A stretch of 64,000 nt of DNA. It comes from Salpingoeca rosetta (lineage: Eukaryota; Protista; Choanoflagellata). The stretch spans positions 1,844,287 through 1,908,286 of the forward strand of contig JAWQFM010000008.1 of assembly GCA_033442325.1 (NCBI GenBank). The letters are read 5' to 3'. Shown here piece after piece: positions 51,054 through 56,027 of the stretch; position 1 is the first letter of the stretch, and each line of letters opens with the position of its first letter. Position numbers and translations under genes: made by a program. Below the pieces are notes generated by a model that had not been told where the DNA came from, searched no databases, and saw only the letters and a program-made list of their open reading frames with translations.

Positions 51054-52210
51054 GACTTCTTGTCACGTTCCCTCCTTTTCCAACGCGCTGCTGCGTTGTC
51101 CTTGCACTGATCCCCACAGTGAAGTCAGCCCAGCGCCTTCCGAATGCCGCTGTCTCCTCGCTCGCAACCAGCAACCAGCTTCGCTCGCAACCAGACAGCC
51201 AGACAGCACCGTCCTCCTTCGCCTGCGTTTTCCCTCTTTTTTGCTTTTGCTTTGCTTCTTTCTTTTCGCTGTTTGTGTTTGGTGTGCCGCGAATTTCAAA
51301 ACAGCTCTGATGCTCCGCAAAATTGGCGAACGGTGCAATTTGCAACACAGTCTCACACAAAATCCTGCAAACGCCAGGTAAAAAACTCCCGGGGAAATTC
51401 GGGTTCGAGGTTTCACTGGCAACATGTCAGATTTTCGGCTGCGCTCCAGTGCCTTCGCTTCCCCCCTGTGTGTGCGAGCGAGCGGTGAGTTGCTTCTTGT
51501 GCCTTTGCGTGACCCCCATCTGCTTTGCTTCTTCGCGGCCGTTGTGGCAGCACTGAGACTCAGGGTGAGCACACGAGCCCCATCTGCCGCTCGCTGCTTG
51601 ATCGAGTGCATGGGTGGAATGCGGCTTGGGCTTGCGGCCTTGCCTGTGGATGAGCAGCTGCGGGTGCTTGAGAACAAAGGGGAGGAGGAAGGGTTGAAGA
51701 GAAGAGGACGATGAAGGCTTTTTTTTTTTTGTCGGTGTGGAGCTCCCACTGAACAGCAGCACAAAACAGCGCGGTGGTGTGGTGTGATGACAGAATGGAT
51801 GGGGGACGATGTGCATGCGTGTGTGTGTTTGTGTGTGTGTGCGTGTGTGTAGTGCGTGGTGCGTGTGAGTTGGCTGCGATCACTGCATGCAGTGCTCAAA
51901 TGCCGCTCTTATGCCAGCAACACCCGCAACGGCAACAGCTCCTTCCGTGCCCACTCGCCCCAACCGCCAGCACCATCGTCGGCATTTGTTGTTGTGTGGG
52001 GTCACGTCATCAGCACCCCGTGTACTGCTTCATTTCCAGCACAACTGAGCTTACTTGCAAGCCCTTGTTGATTTGTCGCTCACAATCCTTGGCCGCCGCT
52101 CTCCTCCTTGGTTTGCCACATGCAGTTGAAACAGGCACCGAACGCACTCCGTTCCAAGAAAACCACTGTTTCCCCTCCTATCAATCAATCGACAACCAGC
52201 CACAGCAATC

Positions 52211-53412
52211 ATGACGGTCAGTCGCTGCTGCCCGCCCTGCCCTACTGACCACCATCACTGGGGCAACTGACACTGCAGTTGCAGTGCCCTTTGACGAGTG
52301 CAGCTACACGGCGCTCACACCGCATTTTCGCAGTTGTCCAGTACACGCCAACAGCACTGGTCACACAACCGACAACAACAACAGCAACAACAACAGCAGC
52401 GCTCAGACACCACTGAACATGCAGCAATCCACGCACACGAGCTGACTCACGCACGCACGCACCCACACACGCACTCACATTCGCTTACTCTCTCTCTCTG
52501 TCTCCCACCAACGCGTACACAAACACACCTTCTCATACACACCTCCTCACGCACACACACAAACGCCTGCACACACGTGTTCGCAAGCAGGACCGTGAGA
52601 GCTCGTGGGCGTTGGCACCTGAGCGTGGCCTGGACCAGCTTGAACGGGAGGAGCCCAACGAGTGGGACGGCATCTACAACGAGGTCCCCACCTTTGAGCC
52701 AGACCTCATGTCCTCGCCAGAGCTGCGCACGCGTGCACGGTCCTCCGGCTACGGCAAGAGCGTGCCTGTGGTGAAGCGCGTTGTGCTCGAGCCCAACGAC
52801 CTTCGTCCCTGGGAGGAGGTGCCCACCTTCAAGCCCGAGCTGCAGGAGAGCCCCATCCGCAAGAGTGCCCCATCGTCCAACTACGGCCGCGCCATCCCCA
52901 CCAGGAAGGAGGTGGCCCCCGAGATTCCCAAATTCAAACCAGAGATCCAGCGCTCCCCGTCTGCTCAGCGACAGTTCTCGACCGTCAAGTCGTCTGGCTA
53001 CGGCCGCGTGTCCGCCGCTGTCTCCCGCCCCTCCTCTGCGCCCTCGCTCAAGTTCCGCCCACAAATGCCCAAGAGCAAGCTGCGGCAGTCGGTCAAATCG
53101 TCTGGGTACGGGCGCGTGCTGCCTGACGCAAAGCGGCCCTCGTCTGCGCCCCGGCGCTCCAACAGCATGGACACGTCCACGACGCCGAGCAAGTTTGTGC
53201 CGCGCTACTCGCTGCTCATGGACAGATCAGACAAGGAGGCTGCAGAGGACGCGAAGAACAAGGAGACGGAGGAGGGCGAGTTTGTGCTTGACGGCCTCTC
53301 CTCAGTCAACTCGCGGTCAAAACTCGAGCTCAGCTTCGGCCTCCCTCCAAACCACACCCCATCCCCAAAACAAAAGTCAGTCATGTCACTCCGCACGACG
53401 CTGTCGTTGTCG

Positions 53413-53475
<63 letters not shown>

Positions 53476-53478
53476 CAG

Positions 53479-53567
<89 letters not shown>

Positions 53568-55331
53568 GCTCTGCGCTGCTGATTGTGGAACAACGTCCAA
53601 CATTTCCTTTTGAATGAAGCCTCACCATCACCCGCTCACCATCCCCCCTTCCACCAATTGCGTGTCCCCACCACCTCTCGATTGCGTCAGGGCGCTGCGG
53701 GACTCTGCGTCGTCGAGCAAGTACGGGCTTGCGTCGCCGCCGGTTGCGCCCCGCCAATACAAGGAGCGTGGCCCCGTTGACTTCTCCTTTGACAAGTCCT
53801 CGTCCGTGCTCGACCAGCCCCTGGAGCCCTTTGCCACAAAGACGCCACTCGCAGACAAGGTGCAGTGTCGCACCCGCGCGTGTGTGCACATCGTTTCTTG
53901 TGGTGCTGTTGTGTATGGGAGTTGTAGCCTCGTTTTCTCGCGAGCTTCGTTGTGTGCTGGCCGGTTAAGGTTGAATTGCAAGTGCACTGATGAATACGCT
54001 TTTTGTCTTCTCGCCGATGCCGCCACCAAACCACTCGTCTCACCTATTTCGCACGTCCTGCCATGGGACGTTCCCCCGCTTCTCTCAACAGGTGCGCTCG
54101 TCGCAGTACGGCAAGGCGCCGCCACCACGCGGGGAGAAGCCAGCGCCCAAGCAGCCCGAGCCGCGGTGGTCGCTCACCTTCAAGGGCGAGGTCCCACGCG
54201 ACCCGCCAGCAGCGCCCCGCAACCAGCTCACAGAGAAGGTGCATGCATGGATCGTGCGCTGCTGTCCTCACAGTGCTTGTGTGTGTATGTGTGGTTGTTT
54301 GTGTGTGAGTGTGTGGTTATTTGTGTGTGTTTGTGTGGTTGTTTGTGTGTTTGTATGTGTCCCCCCCCCTTTTTTTTTGTGTGTGTGTGGTTGTTTGTGT
54401 ATGTGTGTGTGTGGCTCAAGTGTGTTTGTATCCGCGTGCCTAAGCTGCTGGGCCACCGGTTCACGCCCGTCGTTGTTACTTCATGTGCGTGCTGCGTTGC
54501 TCACGTTCTGCGTATTGCTTTCCTTCCATGATTGGCGTCACGTTGGTTCAGGTTGCCTCCCACGGCTACGGCCAGGTTTCGCCCGAGAAGGGCCCTCGCT
54601 TCGAGATGGAGGTGCCCCCACTTTGGATCCCTTCCAACAACCCCCGCGTCAAGCTGTCAGAGCCAACGCCAGTGCCACGCTCCCGTCTCAACGACTCGGT
54701 ATGTGTGCGTGTGTGTGTGTGTGTGTGAAGTGAGCGTGAGATGCGTGTATGCGTGTATGCGGGGGTGATGCTTGCGAGTGAGGCGTGCGCGTGTGTGATT
54801 ATGTGGGGAGGGTTGTCATTTGCATCGACACGTTTCGCTATCATTTATGCGTTCCATGCTTCCGCGCTTGTGCCCCCCCCGCAGGTTCGCAGTCACTACG
54901 GCACAGACTATGACCCAACTTCCCTGTACGCTTTGTAAGTCAAGCACCTGCTGCTTGTCGTGGTGGTGGTAGTGGTGGTCGTTGCTTCTCACGTGACTCA
55001 GTGCTGCTCTTGCTTTGCCATGGCATTCCAATGCGTGTGTGTACATCGTATCCTGCCTGCTTGTCCTCTCGCTTTCCTGCACGCTTTCTCATTTCCTTTC
55101 CTGCCACCACCACCACCACCCCTGCTGTTGCTGCCCTGTGTGTTGTGAACGCCAAACAGCAACGGGGAGGACGAGTTTGATGACGAGGCTGAGGAGGGCA
55201 TTGACGGGCCGTTTGTGCAGGAGGGCGAGGAGCACGCGCAGGAGAACGGGGACGAAGTTGTTGTGGACGAGGGAGACGAGGAGGAACAGGAGGAGGAGGA
55301 GGAGGAACAGGAGGAGTTTGAGGAGTACTAG
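52211..55331 (+). CDS. Uncharacterised ~491-aa P/S/K/R-rich repeat protein with acidic EEY tail (candidate microtubule-associated protein)
   Basis: Exons 52211-52216, 52591-53375, 53691-53859, 54092-54238, 54552-54698, 54885-54934 and 55160-55331. All introns are GT-AG and phase-consistent. Eight SSxYG-type repeats; ends ...EEEQEEFEEY*. Confidence 0.85.
53402..53568. repeat. (TTG)n microsatellite, intronic
   Basis: Directly visible; it explains the poly-L tail of ORF 52612..53613. Confidence 0.93.
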
Positions 55332-56027
55332 CCAGCCTGTGCCATTTGCTTTGGTTATCGCCACCCACCGCCGTCACCGGTCGCCACCCATCAAATCACC
55401 TGAACCCACATCATCATCATCGACATCATCATCGACATCATCATCGACATCAACATTATCGCTTCACCGGCGCCGACAAGCGCAACTTGTGTGCAAACTG
55501 GGTGGAAGCGGGAATGGGATGGCTCTTGTTCTGCGTCGTGTGCGTGGCGTTGTGTTGTGTAGTGTCTCTTTGGTGTCCTGTTTTTTTTTTTCTTTTCTCT
55601 TGGACTGCTTCTTGTCGTTGTTGATGTTGTTCGTTTTTTTCTCTTTGTGACTGCTACGTATGCCTCACTTGGTGGGCCTGCCTCCCTCCATCGTCGTCTT
55701 GTTCCATCCATGCCTGTTGTTGCTTGTGTCATGTGTTGTTCGAGCACAACATGTGGCTTTGACAATGAAGGATTGAACCTTTTGACATATGGATGGAGAC
55801 AACTCTGTGTGTGTGTGTGTCTGTGTGTGTGTGTGTGAGTGTGAGTGTGTGTGTGTGTGTGTGTGAGTGTGACATGATGTGACAACGCTTGCACGACAAC
55901 AACGACAAAGACACCACCACCACACACACTACCAACCAAGTGGCAACGAAAATTCATGGATAATTTTAGCAAACTATCACTAATCCACCCTCCTGCGACC
56001 ACGCTGGGAAGAGAGACGAGCACGACG

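What the first reader, a model, noticed from the sequence alone, without database searches (positions are those of the whole stretch)
52211..55331. Novel repeat protein with tau-like SSxYG repeats and an alpha-tubulin/EB1-type EEY tail
Seen: eight related motifs: RTRARSSGYG, RKSAPSSNYG, STVKSSGYG, RQSVKSSGYG, RDSASSSKYG, DKVRSSQYG, EKVASHGYG and DSVRSHYG. The first four are preceded by a F(K/E/R)P(E/D/Q)(L/I/M) motif in a basic P/S-rich chain. The last exon (55160-55331, not called on + in the ORF track) encodes NGEDEFDDEAEEG...GDEEEQEEEEEEQEEFEEY*. Known: C-terminal EEY/F is the CAP-Gly-binding signal of alpha-tubulin and EB proteins, and in alpha-tubulin it is the detyrosination site. Glu-rich tails are glutamylase/deglutamylase substrates, and basic V(K/R)S repeats recall tau/MAP2 repeats. 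Inference: a lattice-binding MAP that displays its own tubulin-tail mimic, to recruit CAP-Gly proteins, act as a tubulin-code decoy, or autoinhibit its basic repeats.
Basis: partly seen in the sequence, partly recalled or inferred. Interest (0 to 1): 0.75.

Follow-up and report, generated by a model that had tools for sequence, protein, structure and literature searches.

The report
Choanoflagellate repeat protein with tubulin-like tail
An expressed Salpingoeca rosetta gene encodes a disordered repeat protein, from a family found so far only in choanoflagellates, that ends in the same acidic-tyrosine signal (EEY) as alpha-tubulin; about four in ten near-full-length family representatives also end in Tyr or Phe, but what reads the signal is untested.

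Summary
A seven-exon gene (52211-55331, +) encodes about 491 residues with eight S(S/H)xYG modules (8 seen, 0.02 expected by shuffling). Its 57-residue tail has net charge -31 and ends EEY-stop.

RNA reads prove the doubted last splice (54934>55160: 116 reads, two assembled contigs, GT..AG). Intron 6 is almost never retained. Transcripts of three other choanoflagellates carry the same join.

A profile search of 1.84 billion proteins finds 145 representatives. All 14 named species or isolates are choanoflagellates. There is no Pfam, PDB or Atlas match. The gene is single-copy in S. rosetta. AlphaFold2 on the closest orthologue shows a disordered chain with a short helix before each module.

Of about 49 near-full-length representatives, 19 end in Tyr or Phe, mostly [DE]x[YF]. 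These lie in both halves of the family tree. One acanthoecid subclade ends (D/E)EQ(T/L)T(I/M)L instead.

S. rosetta has alpha-tubulin ending GEEY, a vasohibin gene and many CAP-Gly domains, so plausible readers exist.

Not supported: homology to tau, and a strongly basic body (net only about +14). Microtubule and CAP-Gly binding remain inference, and the one complex prediction gave no verdict.

Other readers of this scan noted the same stretch.

The parts
52211..52216 (+). Exon 1: ATG ACG (Met-Thr); donor GT at 52217
   Evidence: Read. The orthologue P0015 begins MTDRESSW, exactly as exon 1 plus exon 2 predict. The 1837-base contig of run X12 leaves about 92 bases upstream of exon 2, which fits this exon plus a 5' UTR.
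52591..53375 (+). Exon 2: conserved N-terminal motif SSWALAPERGL, four type-A modules (FxPx[LIM] ... LRxx[VA]xSSxYG), central RYSLL.DRSD ... FVLDG motif; ends in phase 2
   Evidence: Translation; motifs. 71% identical to P0015 of Microstomoeca roanoka. The loose end of reads before 53691 reads the last 30 bases of this exon.
53691..53859 (+). Exon 3: module 5 (SSKYG) and KTPLADK, which runs into module 6
   Evidence: RNA joint 53857>54090 (cut +2), 63 + 23 reads and 2 contigs.
54092..54238 (+). Exon 4, 147 nt: type-B module VRSSQYG ... EPRW ... PRNQLTEK
   Evidence: RNA joints on both sides. Same length and pattern as exon 5.
54552..54698 (+). Exon 5, 147 nt: type-B module VASHGYG ... PPLW ... 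PRSRLNDS
   Evidence: RNA joint 54236>54550 (cut +2), 38 + 14 reads and 2 contigs. Contig pieces end at 54694 and resume at 54884.
54885..54934 (+). Exon 6: module 8 (VRSHYG) and TDYDPTSLYA; donor GTAAGT at 54935. Left unspliced, it would read a stop at 54936-54938.
55160..55331 (+). Exon 7: acidic tail (56 residues plus the split Phe codon, 31 Asp/Glu, no Lys/Arg). It opens with the conserved NGEDEFDDE and ends EEY (55320-55328), with TAG at 55329-55331.
   Evidence: Translation. Joint 54934>55160 GT..AG in 95 + 21 reads and 2 contigs. The same join is in the transcripts P0015, P0016 and P0017 and in a Tara metagenome relative, L029.
55332..55600 (+). 3' UTR, at least to the end of the stretch laid
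   Evidence: Continuous read depth of 76-281 on the same strand.

Best explanation
Shown: this is a single-copy, well-expressed S. rosetta gene. It encodes a roughly 491-residue, almost entirely disordered protein of a family that has no Pfam entry and whose named members are all choanoflagellates. The layout is a conserved N-terminal motif, four FxPxL...LRxx(V/A)xSSxYG modules, a central RYSLL/FVLDG motif, four more (V)xS(S/H)xYG...PxW modules, and an acidic tail ending in EEY-COOH. A terminal [DE]x[YF] recurs in both halves of the family tree. Inferred: the terminal acidic-aromatic residues are a C-terminal short linear motif of the alpha-tubulin / EB / CLIP-170 type. It is most likely docked by CAP-Gly domains such as dynactin p150 or CLIP-170 homologues, and it could be trimmed by vasohibin. 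The eight helix-plus-SSxYG modules would tether the protein along a cytoskeletal polymer, most likely microtubules. The protein would then act as a lattice-bound adaptor that presents a tubulin-tail look-alike.
For: Gene model and splicing come from RNA reads. The repeats are far above chance. The family has 145 representatives, and the named ones come from 14 choanoflagellate species or isolates. It is single-copy in the genome. 19 of about 49 near-full-length representatives end in Tyr or Phe, nearly all with Asp/Glu at -1 or -2. They lie in both halves of the tree, and the label clusters more than in any of 500 shuffles. The Codosiga member ends DDETF; from memory, CLIP-170 ends the same way. 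The AF2 model has mean pLDDT 56 and pTM 0.19, with short helices just before most SSxYG modules. The same genome has alpha-tubulin ending GEEY, a vasohibin gene and CAP-Gly domains, one of them closest to dynactin-1 at E 3e-23. Published work states that CAP-Gly proteins bind alpha-tubulin and EB1 through the C-terminal EEY and that removing the Tyr abolishes binding (PMC3303835, abstract).
Against: There is no binding, localisation or phenotype data of any kind. There is no homology to any known microtubule-binding repeat. The body is only mildly basic. About 30 of 49 near-full-length representatives do not end in an aromatic residue. A whole acanthoecid subclade instead carries (D/E)EQ(T/L)T(I/M)L, which is not a CAP-Gly ligand. 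The tree needs at least 6 changes of the aromatic-end state. No X-box was found at the promoter.
Confidence: 0.38

Rival explanations
1. The C-terminus is a ligand for a different reader, such as a PDZ domain, and the protein is a scaffold partner unrelated to tubulin-tail recognition. [DE]x[YF]-COOH fits the class III pattern and Tx[LIMV]-COOH fits class I.
For: The sister acanthoecid subclade has a strongly conserved T-x-L type C-terminus at the same place. A single reader family that accepts both ends would be the simplest account.
Against: Tyr is an unusual PDZ position-0 residue (general knowledge). In P0033, P0088 and P0025 the EQT(S/A)(I)L motif is followed by 4-7 more residues, so it need not be a C-terminal ligand. 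The acidic-aromatic ends match the CAP-Gly ligand pattern as I remember it in 12 of 19 cases.
Confidence: 0.15
2. It is an actin- or collar-associated repeat protein. The roughly 36-50 residue modules would lie along F-actin of the collar microvilli, working like nebulin or calponin-type repeats, with the tail serving some other partner.
For: The family is found only in choanoflagellates, whose hallmark structure is the actin collar. The regular helix-plus-aromatic modules of about 36-51 residues loosely recall the 35-residue SDxxYK nebulin module (from memory).
Against: No Pfam nebulin or calponin-repeat match even at E up to 10. The EEY end has no known actin-related reader.
Confidence: 0.12
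3. It is a non-cytoskeletal disordered scaffold, for example a condensate-forming or nucleic-acid-binding protein. Its acidic tail would fold back on the Lys/Arg-rich modules, as the HMGB1 tail does. The terminal Tyr would be a sticker residue or a tyrosine-kinase site.
For: The chain is fully disordered with regularly spaced Tyr and Arg/Lys. The tail carries -31 against a body of about +14. The core GYG/SYG resembles FUS-type [G/S]Y[G/S] triplets (from memory).
Against: There are only 8 such triplets in about 490 residues, and the spacers are rich in Pro, Lys and Glu rather than Gln, Gly and Ser. The long acidic tract is not conserved outside near relatives, whereas the very last residue is.
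Confidence: 0.15
4. The terminal aromatic residue has no reader. It persists by descent and composition in a fast-evolving acidic tail.
For: Many members lack it, and the tree needs at least 6 state changes.
Against: Tyr, Phe and Trp together make up only a small share of residues in typical proteins (general knowledge), yet 19 of 49 representatives end in Tyr or Phe. These are spread across craspedids and acanthoecids whose tails otherwise share no sequence or length.
Confidence: 0.1

Closest known systems
C-terminal EEY/F motif carriers read by CAP-Gly domains (alpha-tubulin, EB1-3, CLIP-170 DDETF, SLAIN2)
   Same: Free C-terminal Tyr or Phe preceded by Asp/Glu at the end of a flexible acidic tail. 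S. rosetta's own alpha-tubulin ends GEEY, and the Codosiga member ends DDETF.
   Different: The body is unrelated: no tubulin fold, no calponin-homology or EB homology domain, no zinc knuckle. Binding is untested. The motif is absent from a good part of the family.
Tau/MAP2/MAP4 tubulin-binding repeats (Pfam PF00418)
   Same: Disordered, Pro/Ser/Lys-rich chain with imperfect repeats a few tens of residues long.
   Different: No Pfam match. No PGGG or KxGS motif. Modules are 36-51 residues rather than 31-32. The repeat consensus is L-R-x-x-(V/A)-x-S-S-G-Y-G-K-V-x-P.
PER2 degron 2 (SSGYGS), a beta-TrCP phosphodegron (PMC11223080)
   Same: The core SSGYG string is identical, and some orthologues even have SSGYGS.
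   Different: The Ser at +5 that the DpSGxxpS pattern needs is present in only 11% of 256 module instances, where Lys is commonest. The S. rosetta modules lack it.
HMGB1-type acidic-tail autoinhibition
   Same: A long Asp/Glu tail on a protein with Lys/Arg-rich binding modules.
   Different: No HMG box or other fold. The long acidic tract is not conserved across the family.

Membership tests
CAP-Gly ligand class (C-terminal EEY/F motif) | Aromatic residue (Tyr/Phe) as the very last residue with a free carboxylate | tested here: met
   TAC TAG at 55326-55331 in the spliced, expressed mRNA.
CAP-Gly ligand class (C-terminal EEY/F motif) | Acidic residues directly upstream (EEY, ETF and similar) | tested here: met
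   The tail ends EEFEEY. 18 of 19 aromatic-ended representatives have Asp/Glu at -1 or -2, and 12 of 19 fit the stricter three-acidic pattern recalled from memory.
CAP-Gly ligand class (C-terminal EEY/F motif) | Conservation of the terminal residue among orthologues | tested here: inconclusive
   Kept in 19 of about 49 near-full-length representatives and in 9 of the 14 named members (from 8 of 13 species or isolates). Lost or replaced in S. urceolata and in several acanthoecids.
CAP-Gly ligand class (C-terminal EEY/F motif) | Tyr-dependent physical binding to a CAP-Gly groove (GKNDG) | not testable with these tools
   Needs ITC or pull-down. The one complex prediction gave no verdict and is not counted either way.
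Tau/MAP2/MAP4 tubulin-binding repeat (PF00418) | Match to the repeat profile (PGGG, KxGS; 31-32 residues) | tested here: not met
   No Pfam hit at E up to 10 on any exon, nor at E up to 1 on 42 family members.
Vasohibin/TTL substrates (tyrosination cycle) | Glu-Glu-Tyr C-terminus, and the enzyme present in the organism | tested here: met
   EEY end. The vasohibin gene matches exon by exon at C20:1110069-1111606, best E 2.6e-26. No MATCAP match. Actual cleavage was not tested.
beta-TrCP phosphodegron (DpSGxxpS) | Ser/Thr at +5 of the S-S-G core | tested here: not met
   Position +5 is Lys in 31% and Ser in 11% of 256 instances. The S. rosetta modules have K, R, R, R, L, K, Q.
FUS-like [G/S]Y[G/S] low-complexity domain | Dense triplets in a Gln/Gly/Ser/Tyr-rich, charge-poor sequence | tested here: not met
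   8 triplets in about 490 residues. The spacers are rich in charge and Pro.
Axonemal microtubule inner proteins with solved structures | Sequence match to a chain in a solved doublet-microtubule structure | tested here: not met
   The profile of A1 against all PDB chains gave no hit at E up to 10. This does not exclude an unsolved, choanoflagellate-specific inner protein.

The most novel reading that the evidence does not exclude
Choanoflagellates have a lineage-specific cytoskeletal adaptor that carries a genuine tubulin-tail mimic. It would be a non-tubulin protein whose C-terminal EEY is bound by CAP-Gly proteins and cycled by vasohibin/TTL. The tyrosination code would then be read on a lattice-bound partner as well as on tubulin, and the partner could recruit dynactin or CLIP proteins or compete with tubulin for them.
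Probability: 0.25. Interest if true: 0.75.

Novelty: new variant of a known kind. Interest (0 to 1): 0.55.

Why it matters
C-terminal EEY/F is one of the few well-understood one-residue switches in cell biology, and very few non-tubulin carriers are known (EBs, CLIP-170, SLAIN2). This work defines a family with no Pfam entry that was detected only in the sister group of animals. Its end residue recurs in both choanoflagellate orders, although the tails otherwise share no sequence. That gives a concrete and cheap test in a genetically tractable species: peptide with or without Tyr against CAP-Gly domains, vasohibin cleavage, and N-terminal tagging. The test would show whether the tyrosination code reaches beyond tubulin outside animals. 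If the idea fails, the result is still a validated gene model and a newly defined choanoflagellate-specific repeat family.

Tried and rejected
- Complex prediction. The S. rosetta dynactin-p150-type CAP-Gly domain (L001:1459-1716:-) was folded with the tail exon. Score 0.15, below the mark of 0.34, controls not run: no verdict, counted neither for nor against.
- Protein Atlas feature search with P0004: no usable hit.
- PDB sequence profile search: nothing at E up to 10.
- Pfam on exons and on 42 members: only scattered sub-threshold noise.
- X-box (RFX) scan of the promoter, as a hint of a ciliary gene: no match with 1 mismatch or fewer near 51700-52300. The 2-mismatch hits are at background frequency.
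- beta-TrCP degron idea, from the PER2 SSGYGS match in the literature search: rejected because +5 Ser is not conserved.
- Literature searches for a described choanoflagellate EEY protein or SSGYG repeat family found none.
- MATCAP search of the genome found nothing, but the control genomes did not ring either, so it says little.
- I did not obtain the gene's public identifier, so published S. rosetta cilia proteomes and cell-type expression tables could not be consulted.
Exons were handled by reference one at a time, and full-length analyses used the natural orthologues P0015 and P0004.
- The exon 1/2 junction and intron 2 (with its long GTT repeat) were deliberately left out of the read-laying run.
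Full report
**What is there**

Reading 51800-55700 shows a GC-rich eukaryotic gene on the + strand with GT..AG introns. Earlier notes of this scan name the genome as Salpingoeca rosetta. The closest relatives found here are all choanoflagellates, which agrees.

The exons are 52211-52216, 52591-53375, 53691-53859, 54092-54238, 54552-54698, 54885-54934 and 55160-55331. They sum to 1476 nt, or 491 codons plus the stop. Every search used single exons by reference, and full-length work used natural orthologues returned by the tools.

**Checking the observation**

- All eight motif strings are present.
- The first four sit 10-18 residues after FEPDL, FKPEL, FKPEI and FRPQM.
- Shuffling residues within exons gives 0.023 S[SH]x?YG motifs on average against 8 observed. 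None of 20000 shuffles reached 8.
- Exons 4 and 5 are both 147 nt and share the pattern V.S..YG...P.KG...P.W...PR..L.
- Introns 3, 4 and 5 all fall in phase 0 directly before the V of the motif.
- The last exon encodes 56 residues with 31 Asp/Glu and no Lys/Arg, ending EEY then TAG.

**Is the last exon really part of the protein?**

Yes. Two stranded RNA-seq runs of 2026 and assembled contigs of two older runs were laid on 53600-55600.

- The joint 54934>55160 (GT..AG) is seen in 95 and 21 reads and in both contigs.
- Intron 6 has depth 1-6, against 95-166 on the neighbouring exons. The alternative product ending at the in-frame TAA (54936-54938) is therefore at most a few percent.
- The joints 53859/54092 and 54238/54552 are equally supported.
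- The reads' loose end before 53691 spells the end of exon 2.
- The exon 5/6 junction has no joint row, because the tool skipped a repeat at 54695-54736. It rests on the loose end before 54884, which reads the end of exon 5, and on contig pieces ending at 54694 and resuming at 54884.
- Reads have the first mate on the - strand, as expected for a + strand mRNA in the usual stranded libraries.
- Independent transcripts of Microstomoeca roanoka, Salpingoeca infusionum and Hartaetosiga balthica carry the same junction, LY(A/S)(F/Y)-N-x-(E/D)-E-E-F-D-(D/E)-E.
- A Tara Oceans metagenome scaffold from a closer relative has a separate last exon reading NGEGEFDE ... ETEEY-stop.

**The family**

The word search with exon 2 gave 14 relatives. 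A profile of eight full-length ones (A1), scored against 1.84 billion cluster representatives, gave 145 proteins at E <= 0.001, 46 of them at E <= 1e-30.

Every hit that carries a name is a choanoflagellate, from both orders:
- Microstomoeca roanoka
- S. infusionum
- Hartaetosiga balthica
- Craspedida sp. UC1
- UC4
- Codosiga hollandica
- S. urceolata
- S. punica
- S. helianthica
- Didymoeca costata (two paralogues)
- Stephanoeca diplocostata
- Diaphanoeca grandis
- Acanthoecidae sp. 10tr

The rest are unnamed metagenome or transcript assemblies. One weak hit, P0082, is a membrane protein with unrelated-looking tandem repeats and is probably not a member.

There is no Pfam family for any exon or for any of 42 members. 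There is no PDB chain at E up to 10 and no Atlas neighbour. The S. rosetta genome has only this one copy.

Over 256 module instances the consensus is L-R-x-x-(V/A)-x-S-S-G-Y-G-K-V-x-P, with about six modules per protein. Three non-repeat motifs are also conserved:
- the N-terminal S-x-W-A-x-x-P-x-R-G-L;
- the central R-Y-(S/T)-L-L-x-D-(R/K) ... F-V-L-D-G;
- the P-x-W of the C-terminal modules.

AlphaFold2 on a 42-sequence alignment, with the 71%-identical Microstomoeca orthologue first, gives mean pLDDT 56 and pTM 0.19. There is no globular domain, only short helices that mostly end just before an SSxYG. This is an intrinsically disordered, modular protein.

**The tail across the family**

About 49 non-redundant representatives are near full length.
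- 19 end in Tyr or Phe: EEY x4, DEY x4, and one each of ETY, ETF, AEY, EAY, DAY, GAY, GEF, DSY, ESY, DVY and EIY.
- These occur in both halves of a quick maximum-likelihood tree. The aromatic-end label needs 8 changes (at least 6 forced by well-supported branches), against 15.4 for shuffled labels, with 0 of 500 shuffles as low.
- These tails differ in length from 3 to about 70 residues and share no other sequence. What recurs is the end itself, not the Glu-rich tract.
- A well-supported acanthoecid subclade (14 representatives, including Diaphanoeca and Acanthoecidae sp. 10tr) has a different, sharply conserved end, (D/E)-(E/G)-Q-(T/L)-T-(I/M)-L. In three relatives a few more residues follow this motif.
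- Some members end in plain acidic runs.

It does not fail for the whole family.

**Context in the same genome**

- Alpha-tubulin ends ...GEDEGEEY.
- A vasohibin gene matches over four exons, best E 2.6e-26.
- No MATCAP match was found, though that search is weak.
- There are 33 exon matches to the CAP-Gly domain. One is an N-terminal domain followed by a Ser/Pro-rich stretch, and its best solved relatives are dynactin-1 CAP-Gly structures at E 3e-23.
- Published work states that CAP-Gly proteins bind alpha-tubulin and EB1 through the terminal EEY and that detyrosination abolishes this (PMC3303835, abstract).

**Interpretation**

Shown:
- an expressed gene, correctly spliced;
- a disordered repeat protein;
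- a family seen only in choanoflagellates;
- a recurrent acidic-aromatic C-terminus.

Inferred:
- the terminus is a short linear motif of the tubulin/EB/CLIP type, read by CAP-Gly domains and possibly trimmed by vasohibin;
- the modules bind a polymer, most likely microtubules.

I put this at about 0.38. The motif class has very few other known readers, and the organism has the readers. Against that, nothing here speaks directly for microtubules. The body is only mildly basic (about +14) and has no homology to tau-type or any other tubulin-binding repeat. A large part of the family uses another tail.

The rivals are:
- another C-terminal reader such as PDZ, favoured by the T-x-L clade;
- an actin or collar-associated repeat protein;
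- a non-cytoskeletal disordered scaffold with an autoinhibitory acidic tail;
- no function for the end residue.

The SSGYG core matches PER2's beta-TrCP degron 2 (PMC11223080). The required downstream Ser is not conserved, so I reject that reading.

**Novelty and verdict**

I found no paper describing this family or a non-tubulin EEY protein in choanoflagellates. The motif type is known. The carrier is a family with no Pfam entry that was detected only in choanoflagellates, hence 'new variant of a known kind'. The complex prediction gave no verdict and is listed only under tried and rejected.

Noticed in passing
window 55406-55407 (3' UTR): RNA reads and both assembled contigs carry 15 extra bases (CTGCTTCATTATCAA) that the assembly lacks, inside a CATCATCGA-type repeat. 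This looks like an assembly collapse or a strain difference.
   Followed up: no
window about 53396-53570 (intron 2): A very long (GTT)n microsatellite, about 55 units with one interruption, lies inside intron 2. TG/CA microsatellites fill introns 1, 4 and 5 and the flanks.
   Followed up: no
family members P0041, P0043, P0044, P0047, P0050, P0061, P0063, P0064, P0070, P0073, P0083, P0093: An acanthoecid subclade of the family replaces the acidic-aromatic end by a sharply conserved (D/E)(E/G)Q(T/L)T(I/M)L C-terminus. In P0025, P0033 and P0088 a similar motif is followed by a few more residues. The reader of this motif is unknown.
   Followed up: partly
L029 (Tara Oceans scaffold), 125-2190: A closer relative's gene has the equivalents of exons 3-6 fused into one exon but keeps the intron before the EEY tail exon. 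S. rosetta's three phase-0 introns sit just before each V-x-S-x-x-Y-G, so they were either lost there or gained here.
   Followed up: partly
L019 1354-1842 (G000:C33, EB1-domain match): The open frame holding the end of an EB1-like gene reads ...LYETAEGFVQPESDDEEQHS-stop. There is no GT donor before the stop, so this S. rosetta EB homologue may lack the EEY end that animal EBs have. This was not checked with RNA.
   Followed up: partly
window 54270-54470 (intron 4): Low read depth on both strands, with back-joints and inserted TG-rich letters. Most likely these are reads from similar TG-rich repeats elsewhere rather than a transcript of this intron.
   Followed up: no
P0082 (931 aa, metagenome): A membrane protein with about 14 tandem 40-residue repeats (TKSLSYGRRAGELRKK...) hits the family profile at E 3e-16 in 7 stretches. 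It is probably a convergent Y-G/basic repeat rather than a member.
   Followed up: no
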